A stretch of DNA of 64,000 bases, taken from positions 11,408,001-11,472,000 of the forward strand of contig NC_043025.1 of assembly GCF_006345805.1 (NCBI RefSeq), written 5' to 3'. The notes below the pieces were generated by a model. That model was not told the DNA's origin, ran no database searches, and worked only from the letters and a program-made list of their open reading frames with translations. This document shows positions 4,301-64,000 of this stretch, piece by piece. Source of the stretch: Octopus sinensis (taxonomy: Eukaryota). Every line of letters begins with the position of its first letter. Position 1 is the first letter of the stretch. The translations under genes and the position numbers were made by a program.

Positions 4301-4749
4301 AGAGATCTTCCTCAACACAATTACTGACATCAATGTCGCTGTGGAGTGGATCAAACACACTTTCCTCTACATCAGGGTACGCAAAAACCCTAAACATTAC
4401 GGTGAGTTTGGTCAGCTTTTTTATCAATCCTGTGACCCCCATCCCATCCTGCAGCACAATTAATTTGGTTTATTGTTTCCTTCATTCATTTTTACTGGGT
4501 CTATGTTCACAGGCACAGGTGTGGCTGTGGGGTAAGATGTTAGCTTCCTGATCGCGTGGTTTTGGTTCAGTTCCTATTTATGGTGCACTGAGCAAGTGTC
4601 TTCTATTATAGCCCTGGACAATACAGGTCTTGTGAGTGAATTTAGTACACAGAAACTGAAAGAAGCGCCCATTGTATCTATCTGTCTGGCAATCTATTCA
4701 TCTATCTGTGTATCTCTCTTTCCATCTTTCAACTGTCTATCTATATCTT

Positions 4750-16000: not shown

Positions 16001-17846
16001 TTGCTTACCAACTACACCTTGGGCAAGTGTCTTCTACTATAGTCTCGGGCCGACCAAAGCCTTGTGAGTGGATTTGGTAGATGGAAACTGAAAGAAGCCT
16101 GTTGTATATATGTATATATATATGTTTGTGTGTCTATGTTTGTGTGTCTGTGTTTGTCCCCCCACCATTGCTTGACAACTGATGGTGGTGTGTTCATGTC
16201 CCCGTAACTTAGCAGTTCAGCAAAAGAGACTGTTAGAATAAAATCATAATTAAACTGACCCTACTGTATTTTCTGTTACCCAAAGCCAGGAACGTTCGGC
16301 ACCCCCTTGAATACACAGAAACACACAGATGAGAGGGTGCTAAAAAGTTCCTATCTTTAAGGATATTGCGAAAGGCCTGGTTGGGGGCCCAAACTTCCAA
16401 GATCTTTTACAGGGCTTAGAAAAACTTAAGGACCGCTGCAATAAGTGTGTGAATCTGGGAGGAGAATATGTTGGATAAAATCATAATTAAACTGATCGTC
16501 CTGAATTATATCTTACCCAAAGCCAGGAACTTTTAGGCACCCCCTTGTATACACACAAACACACAGATGAGAGGGTGCTAAAAAGTTCCTATCTTTAAGG
16601 GTATTGTGAAAGGCCTGGTTGGAGGCTGAAATTTCCAAGATCTTTTACAGGGCTTAGAAAAACTTAAGGACCACTACAATAAGTGTGTGAATCTAAGAGG
16701 GAAATATGTTGAATAAAATCATAATTAACTGATCCTTCTGTATTTTATTTTACCCAAAGACAGGAACGTTCGGCACCCCCTTGAATACACACAAACACAC
16801 AGATGAGAAGGTGCTGAGAAGTTCCTATCTTTAAGGGTATTGCGAAAGGCCTGGTTGGGGGCCCAAACTTCCGAGATCTTTTACAGGGCTTAGAAAAACT
16901 TAAGGACCCCTGCAATAAGTGTGTGAATCTGGGAGGAGAATATGTTGAATAAAATCATAATTAACTGATCCTTCTGTATTTTATTTTACCCAAAGACAGG
17001 AACGTTCGGCACCCCCTTGAATACACACAAACACACAGATGAGAAGGTGCTGAGAAGTTCCTATCTTTAAGGGTATTGCGAAAGGCCTGGTTGGGGGCCC
17101 AAACTTCCGAGATCTTTTACAGGGCTTAGAAAAACTTAAGGACCGCTGCAATAAGTGTGTGAATCTGGGAGGAGAATATGTTGAATAAAATCATAATTAA
17201 CTGATCCTTCTGTATTTTATTTTACCCAAAGACAGGAACGTTCGGCACCCTCTTGAATACACACAAACACACAGATGAGAAGGTGCTGAGAAGTTCTTAT
17301 CTTTAAGGGTATTGCGAAAGGCCTGGTTAGAGGCCCTAACTTCCGAGATCTTTTACAGAGCTTAGAAAAACTTAAGGACCACTACAATAAGTGTGCGAAT
17401 CTGGGAGGAGAATATGTTGAATAAAATCATAATTAACTGACCCTCCTGACCCAAAGACAGGAACGTTCGGCACCCCCTTGAATACACACAAACACACAGA
17501 TGAGAGGGTGCTAAAAAGTTCCTATCTTTAAGGGTATTGCGAAAAGCCTGGTTAGAGGCCCTAACTTCCGAGATCTTTTACAGAGCTTAGAAAAACTTAA
17601 GGACCGCTACAATAAGTGTGTGAATCTAAGAGGGAAATATGTTGAATAAAATCATAATTAACTGACCCTCCTGTATTTTCTGTTACCCAAAGCCAGAAAC
17701 TTTTCAGCACACCCACTCCCTCACCTCCATAGTTAAGTTACAACTTTGCTTATTAGTTATGAAATGCAGAGCAAATGTAGGGAAAATTCAGATAAACACA
17801 GGTGGTAGCAACTAAAAATAAAAACTCGTGTTTATCTTAATTCCTC

Positions 17847-17881: not shown

Positions 17882-18147
17882 ATCCGATCATCCCATAAAT
17901 AACGCAGTTGTTTTTCTTATACTTCTTTTGTTTTACAAAATTAAGATAAACAAAGTTCTTTACAGCACAATCATGAAGGATTTATTTTTTTGTCAAACAA
18001 ATCAAGCCTAAAACTTATTTCATAAGCCTAGTATTTATTCTGTCAGTCTCTTTTTGCCAAACCGCTAAGTTATGCGGATGTAAATACACCAACACCAGTT
18101 CCCAAGTGGTAATGGGAGAACAGACGCAGACACAAAGCCACTAACAC

Positions 18148-18185
<38 letters not shown>

Positions 18186-21100
18186 GTGAATGGAATAAAT
18201 GGAGTTGAACGAAGATTGTACAGAATACCTTTTACTACATTCTACACATGTTTCGAAGGCCGCAAATTTCCAAATTCTGTTTAAATAAGGATACTATATT
18301 GCGGCTTTCTCTTCAGGAGAATGGTCTTATCTCCAAATGTGCTGTTTTCCGCTGTGATTTTTGCTACCCAGGTATCGGTTAAACCTTTGAATAATCTGTT
18401 ACAAAAAATTCATCTTTCTATTTCAACATATATATATATCTTTATATATAAAAGTAAAGTTGTGTGTCTGTCTCCTACGATTTAGATTCCTAACTACTCC
18501 CACATTTTAAGGTGCAGTTTAACCAAAACCGGGTATCTTATAGTTGTGATTCATATCGAGCCCTTCTGGGTATTAGCGTGCGTCTACGATGAGTCTACGA
18601 TTTAAAAAAAAATTTACCATCATTTCTTTCCATTTTAATGCATTTTTCGCTATTATATAAGGGAAGTAACTCTCTAAAAATGTCTACGATGAGTCAACGA
18701 TTTAAAAAAAAATTTACCATCATTTTTTTTCCATTTTAATGCATTTTTTTGCTATTTTTTGGCTATAACTCTCTAAAAATGCTTATATAGTTATTTCCCT
18801 TACAAACCCGAGCAACACCGGGCGATACTGCTAATATATATATATATAATCAAAATAAGCAACAAGAATAACTCCGGTAATTTGGTACGATCGTTTCGCA
18901 CTACATCAATATATATATATATTGGTCAATGAGGAAACTAGAAATAGATGAATGGTTAGTGAGAGCTGTGCAAGCCATTGACTCAAATTAGAGAAGGGGT
19001 GCATATTATACACAAAGTTTAGGTTTTTCAGAGGTACAGCCCCCTAAAAATCTCCTGCGTATTATACACAAAGTTTAGGTTTTTCAGAGGTACAGCCCCC
19101 TAAAAATCCCCTGCGTATTATACTCAAGGGCGGACTATACTCGAGGATTTACAGTAGTAGGGTATTTCTAAAAGGTTGGCAGAATCATTAGCACATCGGT
19201 CAAAATGCTTAACAGCATGTCTATTTTTATGTCCTGAGTTCAAATTTGACTGGGTTGATAAATTAAGCACCAGCCTAGTACTGGGATCAATGTGTTTGAC
19301 TTTCTCCTTCCCCCCAAATTTCAGGTCTTATGCCTATAGTAGAAAAGATTGGTGCCCCTGTACACTGTATACAATAATTTCATTATTGTTCCGAATCGTG
19401 GCCGATGCCAGCGACGCCTCGACTGGCTTCCATGTCGGTGGCACGTAAAAAGCACCATCCGAATTGTGGCCAAAGCCAGTGCCGCCTCGACTGGCTTTCG
19501 TGCAGGTGGCACGTAAAATGCACCAATCCAACCATGGCCGATGCCAGCCTCGCCTGGCACCAGTGCAGGTGGCACGTAAAAAGCACCCACTACACTCACG
19601 GAGTGGTTGGCGTTAGGAAGGGCATCCAGCTGTAGAAACATTGTCAGATAAGACCGGAGCCTGGTGCAGCCTTCTGGCTTCCCAGATCCCCGGTCGAACC
19701 GTCCAACCCATGCTAGCATGGAGAATGGACGTTAAACGATGATTATTATTATATATATATACTAGCAGTATCGCCCGGCATTGCTCGGGTTTGTAAGGGA
19801 AATAACTATATAAGCATTTTTAGAGATGTAAAGTATAATAGCCATCTCAATATGGCTAACCACAATGGGGGGGGTTACTGTAGCTTTTTACGTTCTGAGA
19901 TTTAATAATAAATTTTTAGAGAGTTACTTCCCTTATATATGCCAAAATGCATTAAAAATGGGAAAAATTGATGGTCAATTTTTTTTTAAATCGTAGACTC
20001 ATCGTAGACGCGCGCTAATACCCAGAAGGACTCGATATGAATCACGACTATAAGATACCCGGTTTTGGTTAAACTGCACCGCAAAATGTGGGAGTAGTTA
20101 GGAATCTAAATCATAGGGGACAGACACACAACTACACTTTATATATAAAGATTATTATTATTATTAATTTGTACAATACTGTTTCATTAATCAACCATGA
20201 CAAAATGCATTAATAATTGTATTTCCTTTTATTCCTCCTCCTCCTCCTCCTCTTTGACCTCCTCATACTCATCTTCCACTCCCTCCTTCCTTCCTCATCC
20301 TCCTCCACCTTATACCTCCTCATCTCCTCATTGTCATTTATTTCTCCCAATTCCTTGTCATTTCTATCTTTTTCTTTTTACCTATCTCTCCTTCTCACAT
20401 ATCACCTCTTCATCTCCCCCCCCTCTCTCTCTCTCACTATCGCTGTCTTTCTATCTCTTTCTCTCTTCCTTTCACATCTCTACTTTTCATATTTCTTCCT
20501 CTACCATTGTTCATCTGTCTTTGTCACTGTTCAACTTTCTCTGCCTGTCTGTTCATTTCTCTCCCTCTCATATCTCTTACATCTCAAATTTCTTCCTCTC
20601 TCTTCTCCATCTCTCTCTTTTCCATCGCTCTCTTCTCCATCTCTTTCTTTTCCGTCTCTCTCTTCTCTGTCTCTCTCTTCTCCGTCTCTCTCTCTCTCTT
20701 CTCCATCTCTCTCTTCTCCATCCCTCTCTTCTCCATCTCTCTCTTCTCCATCTCTCTCTTCTCCATCCCTCTATTCTCCATCCCTCTCTTCTCCATCCCT
20801 CTCTTCTCCATCCCTCTCTTCTCCATCCCTCTCTTCTCCATCCCTCTCTTCTCCATCTCTCCCTTTCTTCCTTCTCATATTTCCCATCTCTGTGTCTCTG
20901 TCAAATTTCTTTCTATCTCTCTTCTCATATCTCTACTTGCTCATCTTGCCCCTCATCTCTTTCTCTCTCTCTCTCTCTCTCTCCCTCATCCATTCTTCCC
21001 TAGGTCTTCAAGAGATCCTGTGGCTCAAGGATTGCCATAAATCCCTCATCAACGCCATCTACATCAACAAGTGCTTTAAAGCCCGCATCTGGGAGAACTC

Positions 21101-23551
21101 AAAATATGTTACCAAGCAACTGGAAGGAATAGGTATGTTATCTCTTGTCTCTCCTCCCCTCCACCATCCTTTTCAGTTCCAATTGCAACTAAGTATCTGA
21201 AGGGGACAAGGATCATGTTTAAATATAGGAGCACTCCGTCGGTTACGACGATGAGGGTCCCAGCTGATACGATCAACGGAACAGCTTGCTCGTGAAATTA
21301 ACGTGTAAGTGGCTGAGCATTCCACAGACACGTGTACCCTTAACGTAGTTCTCGGGGATATTCAGCGTGACACAGAGAGTGACAAGGCCGGCCCTTTGAA
21401 ATACAGGTACAACAAAAACAGGAAGCAAGAGTGAGAGAAAGTTGTGGTGAAAGAGTACAGCAGGGTTCACCACCATCCCTGCCGGAGCCTCATGGAGCTT
21501 TAGGTGTTTTCGCTCAATAAACACTCACAACGCCCGGTCTGGGAATCGAAACCGCGATCCTACGACCGCGAGTCCGCTGCCCTAACCACTGGGCCATTGC
21601 GCCTCCACATGTTTAAATATACTGCAACAGATTAATAGTCCACTACAAGGTCCAGTCCTTCTTGTAGCGGGGTGGCTTATGTGCCTTGGAAACCCTGAGA
21701 ACTACACCAGCAGAGCTCAAGCCCCTGGCAGGGCCTCTCATACTGGACAGGTCAAAGGGTTTGACAGATTTAATATTGATCACCTTAATATGGATCATGC
21801 TTAATATAGATCATGCTGGATCATTCTGAACAGAGTTGATATGGATCACCTCTTCTCGGGGGTAAAAAGGGATTTGTGCAGGGTCAGTAACCTTACATAG
21901 AAAAACAGCAAAGTTACAGGAGCATTACTCTCTCTTTTACTCTTTTACTTGTTTCAGTCATTTGACTGCGGCCATGCTGGAGCACCGCCTCTAGTCGAGC
22001 AACTCGACCCCGGGACTTATTCTTTTTGTAAGCCCAGTACTTATTCTATCGGTCTCTTTTTGCCGAACCGCTAAGTGACGGGGACGTAAACACACCAGCA
22101 TCGGTTGTCAAGCAATGCTAGGGGAACAGACACACAAACACACACACATACATATATATATACATACATATATACGACAGGCTTCTTTCAGTTTCCGTCT
22201 ACCAAATCCACACACAAGGCATTGGTCGGCCTGAGGCTATAGCAGAAGACACTTGCCCAAGATGCCACGCAGTGGGACTGAACCCGGAACCATGTGGTTG
22301 GTAAGCAAGCTACTTACCACGATGATAGTTTAAAACCAAGACCTGGGAAAGGTAGGCTTTCTCTCAGGGAAACATATGCATCAGGCCCTGGTATGGAACT
22401 TACAAGGGAAACAGAAGTGAGAATTCCCTAAAAATAGCTGAAGGCAGGATACTGAGGCGGAGCTGAAAAAGTAGGAATCCAACTGGAGGAAAGCAGAAAA
22501 GACAGACCAGAATCGAGAATAATCAAGAAAAGGGATCTTTTCGGTTTGAACGGCAGTTTTTTCTAGCGGTGTCATATGAAATTGTCACCCGTAATTATGA
22601 CCCTAGTATCGATCTATTGCATTTCAATCTGTTTTAGGGTTAGGGTTAGTTAGGGGTTGGGGGAAGGGTATCTTTTTTTCTTCACAAATGTAAATAAACC
22701 CAATCTGTTTCTTAAATGAGGGACATATTCATATGGCGCAGAATGTTTTTTACCTCAATAGACGTCAGTGATTGGTTGAAATTGCAGAAATTGAAGACAA
22801 AAAAACAACAAATATCTTAGAAACTATAGAATTTTCTCAATAAAGCCAAGAGAAAAAAATGTTTCATAAACACATTCTACCAGTATACGAAGTTTAAAAG
22901 TGTTTAGTTACGTGGAAATTATTTTAAAAAACTGCCGGTCAAACCGAAAAGATCCAAGAAAAGTTGTTGATGGTCTACATTCCATAGGAAATGAAGGTAA
23001 AAATGGGTTTGCAGAGTCAACACCCCTAACTAGAGAAAAAAAAAACGCAAAATTACGAAAGCATTGATGACAATTCAAATCCAAGATCTGAAAGAGGAAG
23101 GTTTTCCTCTGAGGAAACAAATGATGTAGTACAGTAGAATTCAAAAGGAAATACTATAGGGTTGGCCCCTCTCTTGATCTCCGGGAGAACATGTCAGGCC
23201 CTGATCATGTGACCCACAAGGGAGATGCACATAGTCAGCCACTAAGGAACATGCTCAAATGGTTAAGGTCATACAACCAACAAGCAAATCTGTAGAACTG
23301 AGCAGAATACTCTCTACTCTCTCTCTTTTACTCTTTTACTTGTTTCAGTCATTTGACTGTGGCCATGCTGGAGCACCGCCTTTTTAGTCGAGCAAATCGA
23401 CCCCGGGACTTATTCTTTGTAAGCCCAGTACTTATTCTATCGGTTTCTCTTTTGCCGAACTGCTAAGTGACGGGGACGTAAACACACCAGCATCGGTTGT
23501 TAAGCAATGCTAGGGGGACAAACACAGACACACAAACGTACACACACATAC

Positions 23552-23694: not shown

Positions 23695-25305
23695 CGACAG
23701 GCTTCTTTCAGCTTCCGTCTACCAAATCCACTCGCAAGGCATTGGTCGGCCCGGGGCTATAGCAGAAGCCACTTGCCCAAGGTGCCACGCAGCGGGACTG
23801 AACCCAGAACCATGTGATTGGTAAGCAAGCTACTTACCACACAGCCACTCCTGCGCCGAGCTGGCAGAAACATTAGCACGCCGGGCAAAATACATTGCCA
23901 TATTTTGTCTGCCATTACATTCCGAATTCAAATTCCGCCGAGGTCGACTTTGCCTTTCATCCTTCCGGGGTCGATAAATTAAGTACCAGTTACGCACTGG
24001 GGTCGATGTAATCGACTTAATCCGTTTGTCTCCTCTGTGTTTAGCCCCTTGTGGGTAGTAAAGAAATATATATTTGCTGTAACTCATCTTTTATACCAAG
24101 ACAAAACGTGTACATGATAACACTTCCAATCAATTAAGATCAGAAGCCGTGGGAACCATTGCTTGGTATTGCATCAGGGTATTTATTATTACAATTATTG
24201 TTGTTGTTGTTGTTGTTGTTGATGATGATGATGCTGTATTTGTCTCTCTGATAGGTCAGTCTCTTTCAAATGCCTTGGTAAATGCTGGAATAGTCAACTT
24301 CGACAAAGTCAGTGAAACAAATCCCAGAGAACTAGAATTGGTAAGTAACAATTTGGTGGCTGTTTAACCCCAGGTCAGTTCAGCTCAGCTCCAGCGGACC
24401 TATGATCAAAGGTGTTCCAGCTATATCCATCTTGTCTTTTATTTACAGATAGTGTACCTAGGACTACATTATCTAATGTGTCCTTCCTTATTGCTTAACC
24501 GAAGGTCAACTGTGATCCAGTAGACCCATATGTGACCATCCTGTCTTTTATTTAGATATTGTGTATTTAGGAGTCCATTATCTTAAGTGTCCCTCCTATT
24601 TGTTTATTCCTAGATCAGTTGTAAGCTAGTAGACCTTTTCTTTTATTCTTTTACTTGTTTCAGTCATTTGACTGTGGCCATGCTGGAGCACCACCTTTTT
24701 AGTCGAGCAAATCGACCCCAGGACTTATTCTTTGTAAGCCTAGTACTTATTCTATCGGTCTCTTTTGCCGAACCAGAATTTGGTATGGTATTATTCATAT
24801 AAATCAAATGGGGTGATTGTAATCAAAATAAGCGACAAGGATATCCAAGGTTGTGTAGTACAATCGTTTCATGAAACGATTGTACCACGCTACCTTGGAT
24901 ATCCTTGTCGCTTATTTTGATATATATATATATTTCAGATAACCAACCGCCACCCACCATTTGGAAACCAACTGAAAGAGGCAGTGATGGGTTTACCAAA
25001 ATATAACATAGCCATTAAACAAGTCCAGGTAATACAGTAATGTGTGCTTGTTAGTATTTTTCAGGTTTTCATATCAATGGCTTGGATTTTAAGGGTCCAA
25101 TCAAGCAGCCCAAATGTTGGTATGAGTACTGGCACTGCAAACATATTGTGGGCCACTGTTTTATTGAATGCAGAAAGTTCTGAGGTCCAAATTTTCTTTA
25201 TTCAGCTGTAATATTCTTTAGTAACTATGTATGTATATATGTATACATAGATACATATATATATGCCAGCATAGAAAACAGGTGTTAAATGATGATGATG
25301 ATGAG

Positions 25306-25360
<55 letters not shown>

Positions 25361-26350
25361 AGTAGTTGAATGAATTATCTTATTAAAGATAATTCGAAAG
25401 ATAACCGATACCTGGGTAGCACTCTCTCACCTTACTATTCTTATGCCTCCCTCCTCCTACTTTGTTTGAACCCTTGAACCTTTAGAACCTTCTAGATTCT
25501 TCTACATTCAGCCACTCTGACATCACTCCTTATAAAGAGACACTCATTATCGCCATGGGCTCCTTGAGAGTGGTCAGCTAAAAGTTTTTTGTGCATTTTG
25601 ATGTCGACATAAGTTCCTTGATTTTCCTGATGAGAAATCTGCATGATGTACTCCTTATTCCTTCGGAATTAGGAATATGCAGCCTTCGAAACATATGTCG
25701 AGAATAAAGGATATTTGTTAACTAGTCGTTCAACTCCATTCTTTCATATACTTATATATATATATATATATTTATTATTTGAGGGAATAAAATCCAAACT
25801 TACAAGGAAAAAAATTCAATTTAGAAATACTAAATCAAATTTCACCCAATATAATATATATATAAAAAATTAGAAAAAAAACACCTTTTATCAATTCAAA
25901 ATGAACAATTAAATTACACCATCTAGAAAATTACATATAATAGAAATATTAAAATTAAAATAACAATAAAATGTAAAGATTAAGTAAATTGCAAAAATAA
26001 TAATAAAAATGTATATAATAGGTAGAAAAACGACACATGTTTCGTGGCTATATTTAAAAAATGATTATATATATATATATACACACACACACGCATACAT
26101 GTATATATGTATTTTGAGAGAGATAGATATACTCTTTTACTCTCTCTCATTTACTTGTTTCAGTCATTTGACTGCGGCCATGCTGGAGCACTGCCTTTAG
26201 TCGAACAAATCGACCCCGGGACTTATTCTTTGTAAGCCCAGTACTTATTCTATCGGTCTCTTTTGCCGAACCGCTAAGTGACGGCGACGTAAACACACCA
26301 GCATCGGTTGTCAAGCAATGCTAGGGGGACAAACACAGACACACAAACGT

Positions 26351-28216: not shown

Positions 28217-31200
28217 CATACATATATACAACAGGCTTCTTTCAGTTTCCGTCTACCAAATCCACTCACAAGGCATTGGTCGGCCCGGGGCTATAGCAGA
28301 AGACACTTGCCCAAGATGCCACGCAGTGGGACTGAACCCGGAACCATGTGGTTGGTTAGCAAGCTACTTATCACACAGCAACTCCTGCTTGTTTCTCTTT
28401 TTCACACTGTTGTTACTGTTGTTGTTGTTACATAAACTTTTATTGTGTAGGGACAGGATCTTACTCGAAGAAAATGGTTTTGTGAAAAAAGTGCCAGTTA
28501 GAAATTCCATGAAAGGGCCCGAGATATTTGTGAATTTAATCAGTTTTGATTGGGGTGAGTATGATTAATTAATTGTGCTTACATTAATTAATATATGTAC
28601 TGTCTGTTGTTGTTTTATTCAAACTTAGTGTATCTAGGACTACATTATCTAATGTGTCCTTCCTTATTGTTGTTTAGCCCCAGGTCAGCCCTGATTCAGC
28701 AGACCTATGATCAAAGATGTTCCAGGTGTCACCCTCCTGTTTTTGATTCAGGCATAGTGTATCTAGGACTACATTATCTAATGTGTCCTTCCTTATTGTT
28801 GTTTAGCCCCAGGTCAGTCCTGATCCAGTCAGACCTATGATCAAAGACATTCCAGCTGTGACCGTCCTGTTTTTGATTCAGGCATAGTGTATCTAGGACT
28901 ACATTGTCTAATGTGTCCTTCCTTATTGTTGTTTAGCCCCAGGTATATCCTGATCCAGTCAGACCTATGATCAAAGACATTCCAGCTGTGACTATCCTGT
29001 CTTTTATTCTGGGATTACACTATCTAATGCATCTTTGTTGTTGTTGGTTGTGGTGTTTAACCCGTGGTCAGTTTTGATCCTGCAGACCTGTAATCAAAAG
29101 TGTTCCAGCTATGACTGTCATGCCTTTTATTGAGGCAAAATTTATCTAAGAATGTATTATCTAATATATGGATGGAAGCACTTCGTCGGTTACGACGATG
29201 AGGGTTCCGGTTGATCTGAATCAACGGAACAGCCTGCTCGTGAAATTAACATGTAAGTGGCTGAGCACTCCACAGACACGTGCACCCTTAACGTAGTTCT
29301 CGGGGATATTCAGCGTGACACAGAGAGTGACAAGGCCGACCCTTTGAAATACAGGTACAACAGAAACAGGAAGTAAGAGTGAGAGAAAGTTGTGGTGAAA
29401 GAGTACAGCAGGGATCACCACCATCCCCTGCCGGAGCCCCGTGGTTCTTTTAGGTGTTTTCGCTCAATAAACACTCACAACGCCCGGTCTGGGAATCGAA
29501 ACCGCGATCCTATGACCGCGAGTCCGCTGCCCTAACCACTGGGCCATTGCGCCTCCACAGGTACAACAGAAACAGGAAGTAAGAGTGAGAGAAAGTTGTG
29601 GTGAAATAGTACAGCAGGGATCACCACCATCCCCTGCCGGAGCCTCGTGGAGCTTTAGGTGTTTTTGCTCAATAAACACTCACAACGCCCGGTCTGGGAA
29701 TCGAAACCACGAGTCCACTGCCCTAACGTCTGGGCCATTGCGCCTCCACTATCTAATATATACACTCAACAAGGTTTTTTTTTTTTTCTTGTTTCAGTCA
29801 TTTGACTGCGGCCATGCTGGAGCACCGCCTTTAGTCGAGCAAATCGACCCCGGGACTTATTCTTTGTAAGCCCAGTACTTATTCTATCGGTCTCTTTTTG
29901 CTGAACTGCTAAGTGACGGGGACGTAAACACACCAGCATCGGTTGTCAAGCAATGCTAGGGGGACAAACACAGACACACAAACATACACACACACATATA
30001 TATATATATACATATATACACGAGAGGCTTCTTTCAGTTTCCGTCTACCAAATCCATTCACAAGGCTTTGGTTGGCCTGAGGTTATAGTAGAAGACACTT
30101 GCCCAAGGTGCCATGCAGTGGGACTGAACCCGGAACCATGTGGTTGGTTAGCTAGCTACTTACCACACAGCCACTCCAAACAATAACGGCGACAACCATG
30201 TCTTGTATTTTCTAATTCACCAAAATATTAAAGAAATAATAATTCAACTTGCTATTGTTGTTCTTGTTCCAGTTGGTATTGACGTGTCTAGATCTTTTAC
30301 ACCAATTTACCATGATTATTCCTGCCAACCAGAGGTTAGTCACTTTTTCCATAATTTTAGTGGATTGATTTTGTTAATTTTAAAGTAGAAATATAAACAT
30401 TTGTGCCTGTCTTCATGCTCCAGCATGGGTTAAGGTTAGGGGTGGGGGAAGGGTATCTTTTTTTCTTCGCAAATGTAAATAAACCCAATCTGTTTCTTAA
30501 ACGCTCGATTCAAAGTGTCTCTTGACCAGAAATGGCCTGAACTCTTTGTATGACCACCCTCCCTGTGAATAACTCCCTGTCCCCCTACATGGCCTTGCTT
30601 TTGCTTTTTGAGCCCATAAAAATAAAATAAAATAATTAAATTAAGCTAGAGGTACTTGATAGTTTCCATTATTTAGGAGATTAAGTCAGTAGTGGAGGTG
30701 GATTCTCCAAGAGTGTGGCTACAAGAATAATAGGTTGGACAAAGTTCAGAGAGCCTCTATGTGTGTGTGTGTGTGTGTGAATATGTACATGTATGTGTAA
30801 ATGTGCACATTTTCATTTATCTGTTAGAATTATCTATTCTGTGCCGTATGAATATGTCCCTCGTTTAAGAAAAAGATTGGGTTTATTTACATTTGTGAAG
30901 AAAAAAAGATACATACATTCATACAGCACAGAATGTTGTTTACGTCAATGGAGGTCAGCGATTGGTTGAAATTACTGAAATGCTCGAAATTAAAGTGGAA
31001 ATATCTTACAAACTCTAGAATTTTCTCAATAAAGCCAAGAGAATAAGATGTTTTATAAACACATTCTACCAGTATACGAAGTTTAACCCCAGGTCAGTCC
31101 TGATCCAACAGACCTGTGATCAAAGGTGTTCCAGCTGTGACTATCCTGCCTTTTATTCTGGGATTACACTATCTAATGCATCTTAACTAGAAATTGTGTT

Positions 31201-34200
31201 GACATGTGCCGTTCAAAAGGAAAAGATCCCAATTTCATATGACACTGCTAGGAAAAACTACAGTAATTAATGGAACATTCCAAAATCAAACCACATTGAA
31301 TAGGTGACTGTAACAACCAGTTATACCTTCCAGTAAATAATGGAACATTCCAGAATCAGACCACATTGAACTGATGCCTGTAACAAGTTGTACCCACCAA
31401 TGAGTAATGGAACATTCCAGAATTGGGCCATATTGATCTGGTGTGTGTAAGAACCAGTTATACATTACAATAAGAAATGGAACATTCCATAACAACCATT
31501 TATACTCTTCTGTAATTAATGCATATAACCCGAACTAGGATGTTTATGGAAGACTAGCAGTCGCTCATGCATACCGGCCTCCCCTCTCCACGCCACCAGT
31601 GTTATCCAAGGTCCCATTCCTCCAAACAGTCTTTGTTGGAAAGTGCGTATTTTCCACATTTCTTGTCAAGAACCATTTAGAAAACTCCACTCTTTAGTTC
31701 GGGTTATATGCATTAATTACAGAAGAGTATAAATGGTTGTTATGGAATGTTCCATTTCTTATTGTAATGTATAACTGGTTCTTACACACACCAGATCAAT
31801 ATGGCCCAATTCTGGAATGTTCCATTACTCATTGGTGGGTACAACTTGTTACAGGCATCAGTTCAATGTGGTCTGATTCTGGAATGTTCCATTATTTACT
31901 GGAAGGTATAACTGGTTGTTACAGTCACCTATTCAATGTGGTTTGATTTTGGAATGTTCCATTAATTACTGTAGGGATGTTACTAGTACTAGACCAATAT
32001 GATCTGTTTCTGGAATGTTCCATTTTGCTACCATTGTATCTACTATCCTCTTGTTTTACCATTTTGTCTTCACACAGGTGGCACTGAGACTACCTGCTTC
32101 CTCCTTACCCAACAAGGTGTGTCACCAACCTGACACCAAACCCAGACAAGCACCAAGTAAGATCCATTCTATTGATGCATTGAATTTTCATTACCTTGAT
32201 CATCATCATCATCCAACCATCATCACCACCATCATCATAACCATCATCTCCACTTTTATCATCATCCAATGATCATTATTACTACACCACTGCCACCACT
32301 ACCACAAATACTGTAGTAAATTTACCTATCATGATATACTAACATTAGGTAGCAAAATACACAACTGACTATTTTAATCTAATACTGTGTGTGCACCTGT
32401 GCTGGTGCCATGTAAAAAGACACCCAATACACACTATAAAGTGATTGGCATTAGGAGGGGCATTCAACCATAGAAACTCGACAACACTACACCTGATCTT
32501 CTCCCCTCCATACACACGGTGAAGCATGGAACAAACTGCCGGCATCAGTTGTTAGTTGTCGGAGCACTGCATCCTTCAAAACTTCCATGCTTCCTGAGAT
32601 TCGCCAACACTACACCTGATTTTTCTCCCCTCCATACACACGCTGAAGCATGGAACAAACTGCCGGCATCAGTTGTTAGTTATCGGAGCACTGCATCCTT
32701 CAAAACTTCCATGCTTCCTGAGATTTGCCAACACTACACCTGATTTTTCTCCCCTCCATACACACGCTGAAGCATGGAACAAACTGCCGGCATCAGTTGT
32801 TAGTTGTCGGAGCACTGCATCCTTCAAAACTTCCATGCTTCCTGAGATTCGCCAACACTACACCTGATTTTTCTCCCCTCCATACACACGCTGAAGCATG
32901 GAACAAACTGCCGGCATCAGTTGTTAGTTATCGGAGCACTGCATCCTTCAAAACTTCCATGCTTCCTGAGATTCGCCAACACTACACCTGATCTTCTCCC
33001 CTCCATACACACGCTGAAGCATGGAACAAACTGCCGGCATCAGTTGTTAGTTGTCGGAGCACTGCATCCTTCAAAACTTCCATGCTTCCTGAGATTTGCC
33101 AACACTACACCTGATTTTTCTCCCCTCCATACACACGCTGAAGCATGGAACAAACTGCCGGCATCAGTTGTTAGTTATCGGAGCACTGCATCCTTCAAAA
33201 CTTCCATGCTTCCTGAGATTCGCCAACACTACACCTGATCTTCTCCCCTCCATACACACGCTGAAGCATGGAACAAACTGCCGGCATCAGTTGTTAGTTG
33301 TCGGAACACTGCATCCTTCAAAACTTCCATGCTTCCTGAGATTTGCCAACACTACACCTGATTTTTCTCCCCTCCATACACACGCTGAAGCATGGAACAA
33401 ACTGCCGGCATCAGTTGTTAGTTATCGGAGCACTGCATCCTTCAAAACTTCCATGCTTCCTGAGATTCGCCAACACTACACCTGATCTTCTCCCCTCCAT
33501 ACACACGCTGAAGCATGGAACAAACTGCCGGCATCAGTTGTTAGTTGTCGGAGCACTGCATCCTTCAAAACTTCCATGCTTCCTGAGATTTGCCAACACT
33601 ACACCTGATTTTTCTCCCCTCCATACACACGCTGAAGCATGGAACAAACTGCCGGCATCAGTTGTTAGTTATCGGAGCACTGCATCCTTCAAAACTTCCA
33701 TGCTTCCTGAGATTCGCCAACACTACACCTGATCTTCTCCCCTCCATACACACGCTGAAGCATGGAACAAACTGCCGGCATCAGTTGTTAGTTGTCGGAG
33801 CACTGCATCCTTCAAAACTTCCATGCTTCCTGAGATTTGCCAACACTACACCTGATTTTTCTCCCCTCCATACACACACAAGCATGTATCTGACTCATAC
33901 ATTGTTCGCTTTCCAGACATTTGTACATTACTGCATATGCTTTATATGCACTTTTGACAAATTGTGGTGCACCTGAGCACTGTATACTATAATTTCATTA
34001 TTATTATTATATACAACAAACAGGTGCCTGGTGTAGCTTTCTATCTTACCAGCTCCAGTTGAACTGTCCAACCCACCCATGCCCACATGGAGAACAGATG
34101 TTAAACTGTGATGATGATGATCATCATCATTGTCATTGTGAAGGCACATGGCCTAGTAGTTAGGTGTGCTGCACTTATGATCGTGAGATCATAGTTTCTA

Positions 34201-37200
34201 TTCCCAGTCCAGCTGTGCACTGTGTTCTTGAGCCAAACACCTTATTTCACGTTGCTACTGTTCATGTGAAGGCGCATGGCTCAGTGGTTAGAGCATCGAG
34301 CTTACAATCGTAAGGTTGTGAGTTCGATTCCCGGACTGGGCTATGTGTTGTGTTCTTGGGCAAGACACTTTATTTCACGTTGCTCTAGTTCACTCAGATG
34401 TAGAATGAGTTGCGACGTCACAGGTGCCGAGCTGTATTGGCCCCTTTGCCTTTCTCTTGGATAACACTGGTGGCATGGAGAGGAGAGGCCAGTATGCATG
34501 AACGACTGCTGGTCTTCCATAAACAACCTTGCTCAGACTTGTGACTAGGAGGGTAACTGTCTATGTGCAATCCCATGGTCTGTGTCATGACAGAAGGGGG
34601 TCTCAGATTTTCTCTCTCTCTTGTAGACTGTTCATTCAGCTGTAAATCTGTAACCTTGCAATGAACTAGTCTTCCAATCAGGGGTGATGATGATCTGCTC
34701 ACTTAGCTAGCAGGTTGACATCATTTGAAAGCTAAAATGATGCAAAGCGCATTGTGACCAGCAATGTATAGCAACATCCAATAGTCTAGTCAGTCGTGAT
34801 CATAAGATATATATCAATTATCATCATTTAACATCCTTTTTTTTTTCCAAACTGGTAGCGTGGGCTGCGGGGTCACTCTGAAAAGCTCTATCTATGACGA
34901 TTTCATCTCAATCGAAGGAGAGGGGCTTTCTCTGTCCGGGTTGTGGATCCGTGGAATAAGCTGCCAAACGAGATAGTGAAGATGCCGACGACCGCTTGGC
35001 TCAAAGTCTCTCTTGACCAGAAATGGCCTGAACTCTTTGTATGACCACCCTCCCTGTACATAACTCCCTGTCCCCCTACATGGCCTTGCTTTTGCTTTTT
35101 GAGCCAATAAAAATTGAATTGAATTGAGTTGGATGGTTTGACAAGAACAGACAAGCCAGGGGCATTCACAAAGTGCTATATCTGCTTTGGCATGGTCTCT
35201 TCTGCTGGATGCCCTTCCTAATGCCAACCCCTTCACAGAAATGAAGCTAGTATGCTTTGCTGGATGTCCAATATCATTGTGCATATATGACATAGTGTAA
35301 GCATCTTGAGATGTATGTATGTAGGTATTAGCCACCGACGAAGCTGCAGATGCAAAATATGAGTTAGTCCTTGAGCACACAATGTTCCTGAAGGTCGGCA
35401 ATGGTCTTCCTCGGTCACGAGTGGATGGCCCTAATGTACACCTTTTTAGGGTACGGGGCATTTCTCCAACTCCATGCTTTTCTAATCCCAACCAATTGAC
35501 TTGCTAATGGTCTCTTATTTCAGGTAAAGATAACACAAAATGCCAACACAGGTGTCTCAACAAAAAGGAGTGTAGCCATCAATGTTGTAAAGTTGGGGTG
35601 AAGAAGCCACAGAGGTCAGGGGTCACAAGAAATCCAAGGCGAATGCAGGTTAATGGTGGTGGTGGTGGTGGCATTGGCCAGGTATCAGGGATGGGCCAAT
35701 CCCAGAACTACCAAGAACAGCAGCAAAAGCAGCAGCAGACCCCTGTTGTAAAGGGCCAGAGCAGTATGTACCAATATATGGATGATCTCAAGGAGAAATT
35801 GAAGGGTTTTAAGCAGACCCCTATTAAAAGACTCAAGGTAAGGTAGAATATGCTTGTGTATGTGTGTTTATATATGTGTGTGTATGTGTGTGTGTGTTTA
35901 TATATGTGTGTGTAGAGAGAGAGAGAGAAATCACAAATTCCTTCAGATAGTTGGCGCTGCTTGATCTATTGAAAAGGCTTAGGTAGAAACTCCATAAGAT
36001 GTACCCAGGGTAAGCTATGGACATAGAGGTGCAGCGATATCAGAGGAAGATTAACTGGGAAAGTGGTTGTTGTGTGTGGAAGGTGCACAGGTACAATAAT
36101 GTCTGAAAATGTACAGAAAACAGACTCCAAGAATTGCCAGTAGGCAATCGAAGGAGAGGGGCTTTCTCCGTCCGGGTTGCAGATCCGTGGAATAAGCTGC
36201 CGGATGAGATAGAGAAGATGCCGACGACCGCTCGATTCAAAGTGTCTCTTGACCAGAAATGGCCTGAACTCTTTGCATGACCATCCTCCCTGTGCATAAC
36301 TCCCTGTCCCCCTACATGGCCTTGCTTTTGCTTTTTGAGCCCATAAAAATTAAATTAAATAATTAAATTAAGCTAGAGGTAGTTGATAGTTTCCATTATT
36401 TCGGAGATTAAGTCAGTAGTGGAGGTGGATTCTCCAAGAGTGTGGCTACAAGAGTAATAGGTTGGAAAAAGTTCAGAGAGCCTCTATGTGTGTGTGTTTG
36501 AATATGTACATGTATGTGTAAATGTACACATTTTCATCTATCTGTTAGAATTATCTATTCTGTGCCGTATGAATATGTCCCTCGTTTAAGAAAAAGATTG
36601 GGTTTATTTACATTTGTGAAGAAAAAAAGATACCCTTACCTCCACCCCTAACCCTAACTCTAAAACAGATTGAAATGCAATAGATCGATTCTAGGGTCAT
36701 AATAATTATGGGTGACAATTTCATATGACACCACTAGAAAAAAACTGCCGTTCAAACCGAAAAGATCCGAAAAATCAAACGTTTCAACTTTGTGTTAGTA
36801 TATGTATGTGTGTGTGTGTGTGTGTGTGTACAAGGGAAGTATGTGAATGTTTGTATGTGTGAACCAGTGTTCTTTCAGTAATAAATGATGATCGATGTCA
36901 CATCTCAAAAGACAATCACTAGATAACATTGACAAGTGTATTAATTTGATTTACTATCCATATTCTATCTGTCTTGTTAATAATAATTATTAGTCACACA
37001 CATACACACACACCTACACAAACATATACAAACTCATTAGAGAAAATAATTATTACCTGAATGTATCAAGAATATGAAACGACTCCAGGTGAAAGGTATA
37101 TTATAAATCACCGTGACCGACCAGGCCATCAGATGTTGTTGCACATCGCTGGTCACAATGCGCTTCGCATTGTTTTAGCCTTCAAATGACACCACCCCGC

Positions 37201-40969: not shown

Positions 40970-42817
40970 GCAGAGAGACGGACAGACAGACAAATAAACA
41001 GATAGATAAGTAGAAGGTAGATAGACAGACAGACAGACAGACTGAGAGAAAGAAAGAGATTCTGTCGTAGTTCTTTATGAGGACATTTGGCAAACAATAG
41101 TCTTCTGGTTTGAGTCTTCTCAGAAAAAATGTTCTTCTGTCATTGCCTCACATTTGTGATTATAATCTCGTACATAATGTACAATAAAATGTCTGCTGTT
41201 AATTTATTAATTGGTGTTGATTAACTTTCTTTTATTTTTGTTATTTGCAGATGAAAATATTCATTCTGCCGCAAATGAAGAAACACGAAATGACTTTCAC
41301 TATGGGTGAGTGTTCTTGTGTGTGTGTGTGTGTGAGTGTACAGGTTGGGCTAAAATTTATACACCAGAACATTTGACAATTTATTATACACTAGCACTAT
41401 GACCTGGCAACGCCGGGTCATACTGCTAGTGCATGCATACACAGCTGCGTGCGTACTGTCCAAATCTCCGATCAATCATATACAGCTAGCTGGCATTCAA
41501 TTGGCGTATCAAGTTTCGGGCATTTTGATTGGGTTTTGGATAGAAAATTCACAAAAAAGTCACTTCTATTGATTTTTTAATAGCTTTGTTGGGTGACTGG
41601 GGAAATGTAAAGATGTGCACGACCACCCTTGGACAGTTTTCAATGACCATAGAAAGTGCGAGCTCTCTAACTGAAAAATTGTGGATTTGTATAAAGGACA
41701 CACACACACACACAGACATTTTGCCGTTTATATATATACTAGCAGTATCGCCCGGCGTTGCTCGGGTTGGTAAGGGAAATAACTATATAAGCATTTTTAG
41801 AGAGTTATAGCCAAAAAATAGCAAAAAATGCATTAAAAATGGAAAAAATATGATGGTAAATTTTTTTAAAAATCGTTGACTCATCGTAGACATTTTTAGA
41901 GAGTTACTTCCCTTATATAATAGCGAAAAAAAAATGCATTAAAATGGAAAAAAAACGATGGTAAATTTTTTTTAAATCGTAGACTCATGTAGACGCTTTC
42001 TTAGCCATTTCTGTTTTGGTGTCTTCAAGCCATGAAGTCGTTGTTGTTCTAAAAGAACACTGGTCTCCTTGACAACGCATTACGACGTTGATTTCCTTAC
42101 ACTCCCTTCCCCACAGGTGCAGGTGTGAGCGTGGACGCCAACTCCGCCGCCATCGACACACGAAAAATTATGCATTAAAATGGAAATAAAAAATGATGTT
42201 AAATTATTTTAAAATCGTAGACTCATCGTAGACGCGCGCTAATATTCAGACGGGCTCGATATGAATCACGACTATAAGCTACCCGAATTTGGTTAAACTG
42301 TACCACAAAATGTGGGAGTAGTTAGGAATCTAATCGAAGGGGACAGACACTCACACAACTACAGTTTTATATATAAGATATACATAGCGCAGTAGTGGTA
42401 GATATGACAGAGAAAAGAAAAGCATACATTCACTCTCTGCATGCAATTAGACTCGGAAAGTTCGTGAGGGAGGACCCATTGACCCAATTTGCTGACTTTT
42501 CCGATAGCACACAGGTGTCAATGAATGGTTGAATGACCAAATCCAAGCTTCTCTGCTAGTTCCTCAACAGTTACGATGATATTTTGTTCCACCAGGGTTT
42601 TCAGGATGTCCTTGTCGAGTTCTACAGATCTTTCAGGATGAGGCTCGTCTTCTAGGCTGTAGTTTATGGCTCGGGATTTCTGGAACCACCATTGACACTG
42701 CCTTACGCTTATTGTCCAATCCCCATATACTGCATTAATATTTCTTGTACTTTGCACACATTTATATTCTGTTATTCTTTTATATGTTTCAGCCTTGAGG
42801 TTGTGGCCATGGTGGAT

Positions 42818-42848
<31 letters not shown>

Positions 42849-53969: not shown

Positions 53970-54026
<57 letters not shown>

Positions 54027-63675: not shown

Positions 63676-64000
63676 CTGTGGAGGAGGACAGAGAAATGGA
63701 GATTATATGAGAGAGAGAGAGAGTGAGTGTGCATTTGTGAAAGGGGCAGAGATAGATGGTCAGAGAGACAAACATAGATGGATAGTGATAGAGAGGGATG
63801 GGTGAATAAATAGATGCATAGAGAGATGGATGGATGGACAGATAGAGATATAGAGGGAGGGAGGGAGGGAGGGATGGATGGATGGATAGAGATATAGAGA
63901 GATGGATGGATAGATAGAGATATAATAGAGAGAAGGATAGATGGATAGATAGAGAGAGATGGATAGATAGAGAGAGATGGATAGATAGATAGAGATAGAG

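What the first reader, a model, noticed from the sequence alone, without database searches (positions are those of the whole stretch)
25621..25705. Intact-core hammerhead ribozyme on the sense strand of an HFM1 intron
All catalytic-core nucleotides are present (CUGAUGA, G10.1-C11.1, GAAA, A-U/C-G stem III, GUC). Stem I is AUUUUC/GAGAAU; stem II has 3 bp, two mismatches, then 6 bp; stem III ACAUAUGU is self-complementary. Predicted cut 3' of C25699, ~670 nt after the exon 13 donor. It would be transcribed whenever HFM1 is, so it could cut the pre-mRNA as monomer or dimer. Activity is inference; no loop-loop tertiary contact is evident.
Basis: partly seen in the sequence, partly recalled or inferred. 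Interest (0 to 1): 0.8.

Follow-up and report, generated by a model that had tools for sequence, protein, structure and literature searches.

The report
Solo hammerhead ribozyme motif in a repeat
The flagged sequence really has the full layout of a type I hammerhead self-cleaving RNA, but it sits in a dispersed mobile-element repeat that landed in an intron of an HFM1-like helicase gene, so it is most likely an ordinary transposon-borne ribozyme relic and not a dedicated regulator of that gene.

Summary
Window 25621-25705 (+) reads AUUUUC|CUGAUGA|54-nt helix II|GAAA|C-AUAU-G|UC|GAGAAU. This is a complete type I hammerhead with C17 at 25699. It lies 671 nt after a GT donor, in the sense strand of an intron of a Ski2-like Sec63 helicase gene (HFM1/Mer3-type).

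Rfam Hammerhead_1 aligns to exactly these coordinates over the full model. The score is 29.1 bits, E 8e-6, below the gathering score of 34 because helix II carries a 50-nt insert. The match appeared only with lax filters.

The motif is not unique to this gene. A second, diverged copy of the same ~240-390 nt repeat lies antisense at 18145-18425. It keeps CUGANGA, GAAA and helix II (two compensatory pair changes) but has lost the cleavage site. Both copies have a similar 5' end, carry the hammerhead ~40-55 nt from the 3' end, and are bounded by (TA)n. This fits hammerhead-bearing non-autonomous retroelements of the Penelope/retrozyme lineage.

Helix III (2 bp plus palindromic AUAU) has about 1% pairing probability as a monomer, and there is no sense partner for a dimer. 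Efficient cutting of the pre-mRNA is therefore unlikely, though untested. No further family copies could be fetched. I rate it a new member of a known kind, of low to moderate interest.

The parts
25621..25705 (+). Type I hammerhead motif as flagged: helix I 25621-25626/25700-25705; core CUGAUGA 25627-25633; helix II 25634-25687; G12-A14 25688-25690; helix III A25691-U25698 and C25692-G25697 with loop AUAU; C17 25699; predicted scission between 25699 and 25700
   Evidence: Direct reading; own descriptor; Rfam RF00163 full-length alignment at 29.1 bits
25615..25711 (+). Hammerhead with extended helix I: 5 further pairs (25615-25619 with 25707-25711) beyond a G25620.A25706 mismatch
   Evidence: MFE -24.2 kcal/mol, z -2.48, nearly the three-way junction. 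Hammerhead-constrained fold is -22.8 against an MFE of -25.0. Pair probabilities for helices I and II are mostly 0.5-0.99, also in +/-200 nt context
25634..25687 (+). Unusually long helix II (54 nt): 3 bp, 2x2 internal loop (A25637,U25638 / C25683,C25684), 7 bp, asymmetric loop, 4+5 bp distal stem, 3-nt end loop
   Evidence: Folds alone at -15.2 kcal/mol, z -3.13. Copy 2's helix II gives -16.0, z -3.51. Two compensatory changes between the copies
25363..25776 (+). Repeat copy 1. 5' module 25363-25421; copy-specific stretch about 25422-25585; hammerhead; 3' module 25706-25745 with conserved TCGTTCAACTCCATT; (TA)n-rich tail about 25746-25776. ATTTGAG occurs at 25356-25362 and 25777-25783 (possible target-site duplication)
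   Evidence: Self-BLAST and nhmmer against copy 2; junctions read
18145..18425 (-). Repeat copy 2, antisense to the gene. Degenerate hammerhead at 18239-18322: CUGAAGA, GAAA, G10.1-C11.1 and helix II are kept, but 2 nt are missing at the C17/G1.1 position, so helix I and the cleavage site are broken. (TA)n on both sides
   Evidence: 73% identity, nhmmer E 4e-43 and 6e-38 by construction; Rfam RF00163 only 14.2 bits, E 0.72
25308..25357 (.). (AT)25 microsatellite abutting the 5' end of copy 1
   Evidence: TRF; sequence
24939..25028 (+). Upstream exon of the host gene ([30 protein letters not shown]), acceptor ag at 24937-24938, donor gt at 25029-25030
   Evidence: tblastx to L001
24256..24340 (+). 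Preceding exon ((G)[28 protein letters not shown]), donor gtaagt at 24341

Best explanation
The site is a genuine type I hammerhead motif carried by one copy of a short dispersed repeat of about 240-390 bp. The repeat is most likely a non-autonomous retroelement of the hammerhead-bearing Penelope-like/retrozyme lineage. It inserted into a (TA)n microsatellite inside an intron of an HFM1-like helicase gene, in sense orientation.

In the parent element the ribozyme would have served to process the element's own RNA. Two units pair through the palindromic ACAUAUGU to build an 8-bp helix III, and cleavage follows 3' of C17.

In this solo intronic copy the core, helix I and helix II are intact, so the RNA is transcribed with the pre-mRNA and can form the three-way junction. 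Helix III is too weak as a monomer and no sense partner is nearby. Self-cleavage of the pre-mRNA is therefore expected to be slow or absent, and the copy is best read as a transposon relic.

Shown: the motif, its fold propensity, its repeat nature, the decay of the second copy, the gene context and the strand. Inferred: retroelement class, dimer mechanism, low activity.
For: **Motif and score**
- All core positions and three helices are present.
- Rfam Hammerhead_1 gives a full-length alignment at 29.1 bits, E 8e-6.

**Fold**
- Helices I and II dominate the ensemble even with 200-nt flanks, while helix III pairs at about 0.01.
- The dimer helix III duplex is -8.4 kcal/mol.

**Repeat nature**
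- A second copy lies at 18145-18425 (-), 73% identical over about 150 nt, plus an 81% identical 5' module.
- In copy 2 the only core change inside CUGANGA is at the free position N7.
- G10.1-C11.1, GAAA and the helix III pairs are kept.
- Helix II shows U-A to C-G and U-A to A-U double changes, and 23 of 28 pairs defined on copy 1 still form.
- If the 2 missing nt are restored conceptually, copy 2's 5' strand CAUUCUC would pair perfectly with GAGAAUG. This argues that the ancestor had a working helix I (reading).

**Element anatomy**
- Both copies start within about 10 nt of each other, carry the hammerhead 40-55 nt from the 3' end and are bounded by (TA)n.

**Literature**
- Metazoan type I hammerheads typically have helix I of 6 bp and helix III of 1-2 bp capped by a 2-4 nt palindromic loop. 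They act as dimers and occur mostly as scattered single motifs from truncated elements (PMC4209133).
- Invertebrate ones have a 2-bp helix III plus tetraloop (PMC7229834).
- Penelope-like elements (PLEs) carry hammerheads near their 3' ends. The Naiad clade of PLEs prefers (TA)n targets, although Naiads themselves lack canonical hammerheads (PMC8557442).
- Monomeric retrozyme derivatives are dispersed, and about 44% overlap introns in Xenopus (bioRxiv 10.64898/2026.07.22.740005).
Against: - Only two copies could be examined, so covariation is anecdotal. The shuffle control is uninformative: 161 of 500 shuffles reach the observed value.
- Other blocks of the repeat (a 19-20 nt 5' block and TCGTTCAACTCCATT) are as conserved as the ribozyme core.
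- The Rfam score is under the gathering cutoff.
- No tandem arrangement is present, and the sequence after the cut site does not repeat the element's 5' end.
- No reverse transcriptase or GIY-YIG ORF is nearby.
- The extra nucleotide between A9 and G10.1 that is typical of Penelope min-hammerheads is absent.
- The whole element is not unusually structured (z -1.2), unlike retrozyme circRNAs.
- Helix II is far longer than in any canonical metazoan hammerhead, and no loop-loop contact is recognisable.
- No cleavage or expression data exist.
- The source organism was not identified.
Confidence: 0.6

Rival explanations
1. Functional intronic ribozyme. The hammerhead cleaves the HFM1-like pre-mRNA co-transcriptionally. 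It competes with splicing of this intron and so tunes expression of a meiotic helicase, as proposed for the CPEB3 intronic ribozyme and the amniote HH9/HH10 hammerheads.
For: - Orientation is sense and the location is intronic, with the next exon at least 2.7 kb downstream.
- The core is intact, whereas the antisense copy has decayed.
- Helices I and II form with high probability in context.
- Irregularities sit at helix I position 7 (G.A) and helix II positions 4-5 (2x2 loop), where loops 1 and 2 make the tertiary contact in canonical type I motifs (inference).
- An intronic ribozyme whose cleavage half-life is matched to transcription time is documented for Cpeb3 (PMC10919898).
Against: - The motif belongs to a repeat and is not unique to the gene.
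- Helix III is essentially unformed as a monomer, and no sense partner exists in the window.
- Minimal Penelope-type single motifs showed no detectable cleavage in vitro (PMC4209133).
- No orthologous conservation could be tested.
- One intact and one decayed copy is what neutral decay of two insertions would also give.
Confidence: 0.1
2. Chance resemblance. A repeat that contains a long hairpin happens to be flanked by CUGAUGA and GAAA and by short complementary arms, with no ribozyme ancestry.
For: - The score is below Rfam's gathering cutoff.
- The loose descriptor expects 0.0025-0.0175 hits per 64-kb window. That is tens to hundreds per animal genome, and the first stage scanned many windows.
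- Conservation between the copies is patchy and not specific to the core.
- Copy 2 is not a hammerhead.
- The pattern scan of metagenomes returned 12 unrelated chance hits, which shows how easily the bare core pattern arises.
Against: - The CM E-value for this one family rescales to about 1e-6 for the window and about 0.03 for 2 Gb (arithmetic).
- Features not required by the descriptor are all present: G10.1-C11.1, the GUC triplet, a palindromic tetraloop on a 2-bp helix III, and a helix I of 6 bp extendable to 11.
- Copy 2 varies only at N7 within CUGANGA and shows compensatory changes in helix II.
- Real type I hammerheads number in the thousands in many invertebrate genomes (PMC7229834, PMC4209133). 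The prior for a real one therefore exceeds the chance rate.
Confidence: 0.2
3. The conserved part is the long hairpin, not the ribozyme. The 54-nt helix II would be the functional or structural unit of the repeat (small-RNA precursor, protein-binding hairpin, or a DNA-level palindrome of the element), and the hammerhead core would be incidental.
For: - Helix II is the most stable and best supported part in both copies (z -3.1 and -3.5).
- Both compensatory changes lie in it.
Against: - No Rfam miRNA or other family match above noise.
- The blocks UCCUGANGAGAAA and GCCUUCGAAACAU that frame the hairpin are among the best conserved in the repeat. A bare hairpin does not explain that.
Confidence: 0.07

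Closest known systems
Canonical metazoan type I hammerhead ribozymes (Rfam RF00163; Schistosoma Sm-alpha SINE-like repeats, newt satellite 2, non-LTR retrozymes of coral, mussel and axolotl)
   Same: - Open helix I of 6 bp, the full 13-nt core, G10.1-C11.1 and a GUC cleavage triplet.
- Helix III of 2 bp capped by a palindromic tetraloop, the 'invertebrate' form (PMC7229834).
- An implied dimer mechanism through the palindrome (PMC4209133).
- Carried by a short AT-rich repeat.
   Different: - Helix II has 3 bp, an internal loop and a further ~20 bp of stem (54 nt) in place of 4 bp plus loop 2. No recognisable loop 1/loop 2 contact.
- Solo and not tandem.
- 29.1 bits against the gathering score of 34.
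- The element is not a highly self-paired rod.
Hammerheads of Penelope-like elements (pLTR min-hammerheads; Cervera and de la Pena 2014)
   Same: - Mostly found as scattered single motifs from truncated or non-autonomous copies.
- Larger than usual helix II, with palindromic 15.2-16.2 and loop 3.
- Hammerhead near the element's 3' end.
- Copies flanked by (TA)n; a (TA)n target preference is reported for the Naiad clade of PLEs (PMC8557442).
- Low or absent monomer activity.
   Different: - No unpaired nucleotide between A9 and G10.1.
- Helix III is present and helix I is long.
- No RT/GIY-YIG ORF or pLTR pair in the window.
Conserved intronic hammerheads of amniotes (HH9 in RECK, HH10 in C10orf118; Rfam RF02275, RF02277)
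   Same: Type I hammerhead in the sense strand of an intron of a protein-coding gene; thought to descend from retroelement hammerheads.
   Different: - HH9 and HH10 are single-copy and conserved at orthologous positions, with stable helices and canonical tertiary contacts.
- Here the motif is a repeat copy, orthology is untested, and Hammerhead_1 (RF00163) was the clan family reported in the local scan.
CPEB3 intronic HDV-like ribozyme
   Same: A self-cleaving motif in an intron, whose cleavage could compete with splicing (PMC10919898).
   Different: A different ribozyme class; conserved across mammals; activity and its effect on expression shown experimentally.

Membership tests
Hammerhead ribozyme, type I (Rfam RF00163, clan CL00010) | Conserved core C3 U4 G5 A6 N7 G8 A9 / G12 A13 A14 / A15.1-U16.1 / H17 | tested here: met
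   CUGAUGA 25627-25633, GAA 25688-25690, A25691-U25698, C25699
Hammerhead ribozyme, type I (Rfam RF00163, clan CL00010) | Three helices around the core, with helix I open-ended | tested here: met
   Helix I 6 (+5) bp, helix II 3+7+9 bp, helix III 2 bp. Helices I and II are probable in the ensemble; helix III is not
Hammerhead ribozyme, type I (Rfam RF00163, clan CL00010) | Score at or above Rfam's curated gathering threshold (34 bits) | tested here: not met
   29.1 bits, E 8e-6 in the local search, full-length model, 50-nt insert in helix II; no hit at gathering threshold
Hammerhead ribozyme, type I (Rfam RF00163, clan CL00010) | Helix I / helix II tertiary (loop-loop) contact needed for fast cleavage at physiological Mg2+ | tested here: inconclusive
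   No terminal loops at the canonical distance. A G.A mismatch at helix I position 7 and a 2x2 loop at helix II positions 4-5 sit where the loops would be. Whether they interact cannot be computed here
Hammerhead ribozyme, type I (Rfam RF00163, clan CL00010) | Covariation supporting the helices across homologues | tested here: inconclusive
   Two sequences only: 2 compensatory pairs in helix II, 91.7% of cells paired against 27-50% in slid controls; shuffle control uninformative
Hammerhead ribozyme, type I (Rfam RF00163, clan CL00010) | Site-specific self-cleavage giving 2',3'-cyclic phosphate and 5'-OH ends | not testable with these tools
   Needs transcription/cleavage assays or RNA end mapping
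Metazoan non-LTR retrozymes | Tandem repeats of about 170-400 bp, each with a type I hammerhead | tested here: not met
   No tandem array at the site. Only two copies, dispersed and in opposite orientation. Sequence downstream of the cut site does not match the element's 5' end. The site could still be a monomer derivative, as described in bioRxiv 10.64898/2026.07.22.740005
Metazoan non-LTR retrozymes | Expressed as small, highly self-paired circular RNAs | tested here: inconclusive
   Self-pairing tested: whole-element folds are unremarkable (z -1.23 and -1.18). Circular RNA expression is not testable here
Penelope-like element hammerheads (pLTR) | Located in direct repeats flanking an RT plus GIY-YIG ORF | tested here: not met
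   No such ORF in the window. Elements elsewhere in the genome cannot be searched
Penelope-like element hammerheads (pLTR) | Unpaired nucleotide between A9 and G10.1, with enlarged helix II | tested here: not met
   A9 (25633) is followed directly by G10.1 (25634), which pairs with C11.1. Helix II is enlarged
Penelope-like element hammerheads (pLTR) | Insertion into (TA)n microsatellites (a Naiad-clade trait); hammerhead near the 3' end | tested here: met
   Both copies are bounded by (TA)n on both sides, with the hammerhead 40-55 nt from the 3' end. Features as described in PMC8557442. TA repeats are common in this window, so this is weak evidence
Conserved intronic hammerheads (HH9/HH10 type) | Single-copy motif conserved at the orthologous intron across species | not testable with these tools
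   No eukaryotic genome collection is available. The only relative obtained (L001) is transcript-like and lacks the intron. A second copy within the window argues against single-copy status

The most novel reading that the evidence does not exclude
The long helix II is not decay but a working variant. Its 2x2 internal loop and the G.A mismatch in helix I would replace the usual loop-loop contact, making an active monomeric hammerhead. That ribozyme would cut the HFM1-like pre-mRNA co-transcriptionally and tune a meiotic crossover helicase. Alternatively, the sense and antisense repeat copies pair across three exons and drive back-splicing.
Probability: 0.07. Interest if true: 0.65.

Novelty: new member of a known kind. 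Interest (0 to 1): 0.3.

Why it matters
If the best reading is right, this is one more transposon-borne type I hammerhead of the kind that occurs by the thousands in many animal genomes. It adds little beyond an example with an exceptionally long helix II.

It would matter more if the family turns out to be abundant and active in this organism. That would define a new hammerhead architecture in which internal loops stand in for loops 1 and 2, and it would link it to (TA)n-targeting retroelements.

It would also matter if this sense-oriented intronic copy measurably cleaves a meiotic gene's pre-mRNA. That would be a rare invertebrate case of ribozyme-versus-splicing competition.

Tried and rejected
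**Rfam**
- The whole window at gathering threshold and a 701-nt stretch at E<=10 gave no hammerhead. Only a 116-nt search with lax filters showed it.

**Getting more family copies (all attempts failed)**
- A pattern scan of metagenome contigs gave 12 hits, all unrelated and at the number expected by chance.
- The same pattern in viral contigs gave 0 hits.
- The conserved 19-mer in prokaryotic genomes gave 3 chance hits with no hammerhead module.
- Exact look-up of 10 window ORFs in the protein collection found none.
- A six-frame peptide concatenate of both copies used as a protein query gave no hits at E<=10.
- The source genome is evidently not in the searchable collections.

**Host gene**
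- The 30-aa exon was too short for the protein search and gave nothing against PDB.
- A 264-aa ORF at 45569-46363 gave nothing.
- The gene was finally mapped through one Logan contig.

**Tests of specific ideas**
- A partial tandem or circularly permuted unit was rejected: there is no similarity between the sequence after the cut site and the element's 5' end.
- A rod-like, retrozyme-type global fold was rejected: z about -1.2.
- Other hammerheads in the window's many 100-350 bp tandem arrays: none found.
- Supplementary consensus sequences of PMC8557442 are not held.
- No paper links hammerheads with HFM1.

**Not done**
- The organism was not identified. The evidence shows an animal nuclear genome: spliceosomal introns and a tRNA-Glu.

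Full report
**1. The observation**

The stretch 25621-25705 (+) reads AUUUUC CUGAUGA G..54-nt hairpin..C GAAA C AUAU G U C GAGAAU.
- The CUGAUGA box is at 25627-25633.
- G10.1 (25634) pairs with C11.1 (25687).
- G12-A14 are at 25688-25690.
- A15.1-U16.1 (25691-25698) and C15.2-G16.2 (25692-25697) close an AUAU loop.
- C17 is at 25699.
- Helix I has 6 bp (25621-25626 with 25700-25705).

The layout, with helix I open-ended, is that of a type I hammerhead. Helix II goes on after the 3 bp, the 2x2 mismatch and a 7-bp stem into a distal stem-loop, 54 nt in all.

**2. Is it more than chance?**

A descriptor of my own (CUGANGA, helix II >=3 bp, GAAA, A15.1-U16.1, H17, helix I >=4-5 bp) finds this one site on both strands of the window. 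That stays true when helix III is not required and the U3-A8 core variant is allowed.

In 400 simulated 64-kb sequences with the window's dinucleotide statistics, the descriptor hit 0.0175 times per window with helix I >=4 bp and 0.0025 times with >=6 bp.

Rfam gave no hammerhead at gathering threshold, nor in a 701-nt E-value search. When only 116 nt were searched, and the filters were therefore laxer, Hammerhead_1 (RF00163) aligned to exactly 25621-25705. The alignment covers the full model at 29.1 bits, E 8e-6, with a 50-nt insertion where the model expects 10 nt in helix II. That is 5 bits short of the curated cutoff of 34.

The motif is clearly non-random for one window. On score alone it is only borderline for a scan of a whole animal genome.

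**3. Folding**

The 85-nt piece alone does not fold as a hammerhead. With the extended helix I (25615-25711), the MFE structure is the three-way junction apart from a few pairs inside the core (-24.2 kcal/mol, z -2.48). The hammerhead-constrained fold is -22.8 kcal/mol, within 2.2 of the -25.0 MFE of the 99-nt construct folded.

In the partition function, most helix I and helix II pairs have probabilities of 0.5-0.99, even with 200-nt flanks. The two helix III pairs have 0.01-0.02. The palindrome ACAUAUGU would give an 8-bp intermolecular helix III in a dimer (-8.4 kcal/mol).

This is the known behaviour of metazoan type I hammerheads: helix III of 1-2 bp with a small palindromic loop, poor activity as single motifs and activity as dimers (PMC4209133). 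A 2-bp helix III plus tetraloop is the 'invertebrate' form (PMC7229834).

**4. The motif sits in a repeat**

Self-comparison of the window shows a second copy on the minus strand:
- 18174-18322 is 73% identical to 25621-25760.
- 18362-18413 is 81% identical to 25370-25421.
- nhmmer profiles built from the two copies find only those two copies in the window.

Read in the hammerhead orientation, copy 2 is CAUUCUC CUGAAGA GAAAGCCGCAA...UUGCGGCCUUC GAAA C AUGU G U A GAAUG. Comparing it with copy 1:
- The only change within the CUGANGA box is at the free position N7.
- G10.1-C11.1, GAAA and the two helix III pairs are kept.
- The A.C mismatch at the fourth position of helix II is kept.
- The helix II stem shows two double changes that keep pairing (U-A to C-G and U-A to A-U).
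- Overall, 23 of the 28 scorable pairs defined on copy 1 still form in copy 2.
- Both helix II hairpins are more stable than shuffles (z -3.1 and -3.5).

Copy 2 lacks two nucleotides at the C17/G1.1 position. With them, its 5' strand CAUUCUC would pair perfectly with GAGAAUG. Without them, helix I and the cleavage site are broken, and Rfam scores it at only 14.2 bits. Two sequences cannot give a statistical covariation test (the shuffle control is uninformative). Two other blocks of the repeat are as well conserved as the core. The pattern is nevertheless what an ancestral hammerhead-bearing element with one decayed descendant would leave.

**5. Anatomy of the repeat**

- Both copies begin within about 10 nt of each other, directly after a TA microsatellite: (AT)25 at 25308-25357 for copy 1.
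- Both share a 5' module containing the exact 20-mer TAACCGATACCTGGGTAGCA.
- Both place the hammerhead 40-55 nt from the 3' end.
- Both share TCGTTCAACTCCATT downstream of the hammerhead.
- Both end in (TA)n.
- Copy 1 has about 165 nt of extra sequence between the 5' module and the hammerhead, with no other copy in the window.
- Copy 1 is flanked by ATTTGAG at 25356-25362 and 25777-25783, a possible target-site duplication that includes TA repeat. The equivalent in copy 2 is too short to judge.

The sequence after the cut site does not resemble the element's 5' end, so this is not a partial tandem. The whole element is not unusually structured (z about -1.2). No RT or GIY-YIG ORF lies in the window.

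The literature fits a short non-autonomous retroelement or truncated 3' end of the hammerhead-bearing Penelope-like lineage:
- Such hammerheads are mostly found as scattered single motifs (PMC4209133).
- They lie near the 3' ends of Penelope-like elements (PLEs). The Naiad clade shows a strong bias for (TA)n targets, which obscures target-site duplications, although Naiads themselves lack canonical hammerheads (PMC8557442).
- Retrozymes appear to be non-autonomous derivatives of Penelope-like elements. Their monomer derivatives are dispersed, and about 44% overlap introns in Xenopus (bioRxiv 10.64898/2026.07.22.740005).

Against strict membership, the extra nucleotide between A9 and G10.1 typical of Penelope min-hammerheads is absent, and there is no tandem array as in retrozymes.

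**6. Gene context**

A two-exon peptide (24256-24340 plus 24939-25028) found one relative, a 75-aa ORF on a 6.7-kb Logan contig. tblastx of that contig against the window gives a colinear + strand series of exons at 209-370, 1540-1599, 3472-3528, 4245-4403, 7066-7158, 9067-9168, 12843-12953, 14244-14291, 14815-14913, 20997-21134, 24254-24349, 24939-25025 and 35535-35627.

The joined exons carry Helicase_C, a Brr2-type winged helix and Sec63. They match ASCC3 and Brr2 at E 1e-68 to 1e-62. I infer that this paralogue-level similarity is what a third family member, HFM1/Mer3, would show. No HFM1 reference sequence was available to confirm it.

The hammerhead is therefore sense-oriented and intronic, 671 nt after the donor at 25029. 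Copy 2 is antisense in an upstream intron. The number 'exon 13' cannot be checked.

**7. Interpretation**

The most likely reading (about 0.6) is a solo, transposon-borne type I hammerhead. The core and helices I and II are intact, helix III is built for dimers, and there is no sense partner nearby. It probably cleaves the pre-mRNA slowly or not at all.

The irregularities at helix I position 7 and helix II positions 4-5 sit where loops 1 and 2 would make the tertiary contact. The sense copy is intact while the antisense copy has decayed.
- Pure chance (about 0.2) is disfavoured. The motif has several features that the descriptor does not demand. The second copy shows N7-only variation and compensatory changes. 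Real type I hammerheads are also abundant in invertebrate genomes.
- A hairpin-centred function (about 0.07) does not explain the conserved framing blocks.

**8. What could not be done**

No collection available here holds the source genome:
- Window ORFs are absent from the protein collection.
- A six-frame peptide query of the repeat found nothing.
- DNA pattern scans of metagenomes, viral contigs and prokaryotic genomes gave only chance matches.

The decisive computation is a genome-wide family alignment with covariation statistics and a check for tandem or Penelope-associated copies. That remains to be run, as do cleavage assays and RNA end mapping.

**9. Verdict**

This is a new member of a known kind (metazoan transposon-borne type I hammerhead) with an unusually long helix II. 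Interest is about 0.3.

Noticed in passing
window 18145-18425 (-) with 25363-25776 (+): The antisense and sense copies of the hammerhead repeat form an inverted pair (about 150 nt, 73% identical). They flank three exons (20997-21134, 24256-24340, 24939-25028). In the pre-mRNA they could pair, the arrangement known to favour back-splicing or RNA editing.
   Followed up: no
window 49356-49428 (+): tRNA-Glu (anticodon UUC). Rfam scores it 60.5 bits and ARAGORN agrees. It is the only Rfam hit at gathering threshold in the window.
   Followed up: yes
window 63473-63775 (-): ORF ending in a stop whose product matches the C-terminal end of proline dehydrogenase (Pfam Pro_dh, E 8e-12). It is probably the last exon of a neighbouring gene on the opposite strand.
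   Followed up: partly
window 42521-42946 (-): Remnant of a mariner/Mos1-type transposase N-terminus (Pfam HTH_48, E 2e-6).
   Followed up: partly
window 8232-8974, 12148-12558, 16231-17700, 28626-29009, 32478-33877, 38873-39906, 43948-44408, 51731-52441, 53287-54002: Many tandem arrays with units of 100-350 bp (2-11 copies, 91-99% matches), the size range of animal retrozymes. None contains a hammerhead by my descriptor or by Rfam at gathering threshold.
   Followed up: partly
window ORFs at 2500-2961, 7179-7538, 9588-9956, 10754-11332, 11415-11759, 19321-19719, 44633-45289: A very abundant SINE-like repeat, present in both orientations, whose translation begins [21 protein letters not shown]... 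It often carries internal 60-68 bp tandem units. Together with frequent (TA)n and (ACAT)n runs it dominates the introns.
   Followed up: no
window 25356-25362 and 25777-25783; (AT)25 at 25308-25357: ATTTGAG directly flanks copy 1 of the repeat on both sides, next to TA repeat. It may be a target-site duplication of an insertion into a (TA)n microsatellite. The equivalent in copy 2 is only ATG(T).
   Followed up: partly
window 35535-35627 (+): A Cys/His-rich exon ([24 protein letters not shown]...) is colinear with the relative's transcript. It shows that the host gene continues at least 10 kb past the hammerhead. Weaker colinear matches lie at 28452-28556 and 30266-30310.
   Followed up: partly
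window 10156-10617 (+): A 153-aa ORF (…[15 protein letters not shown]…[13 protein letters not shown]…) reads to me like the C-terminal tail of a non-LTR retrotransposon protein. Pfam gives only a sub-threshold AT-hook match.
   Followed up: partly
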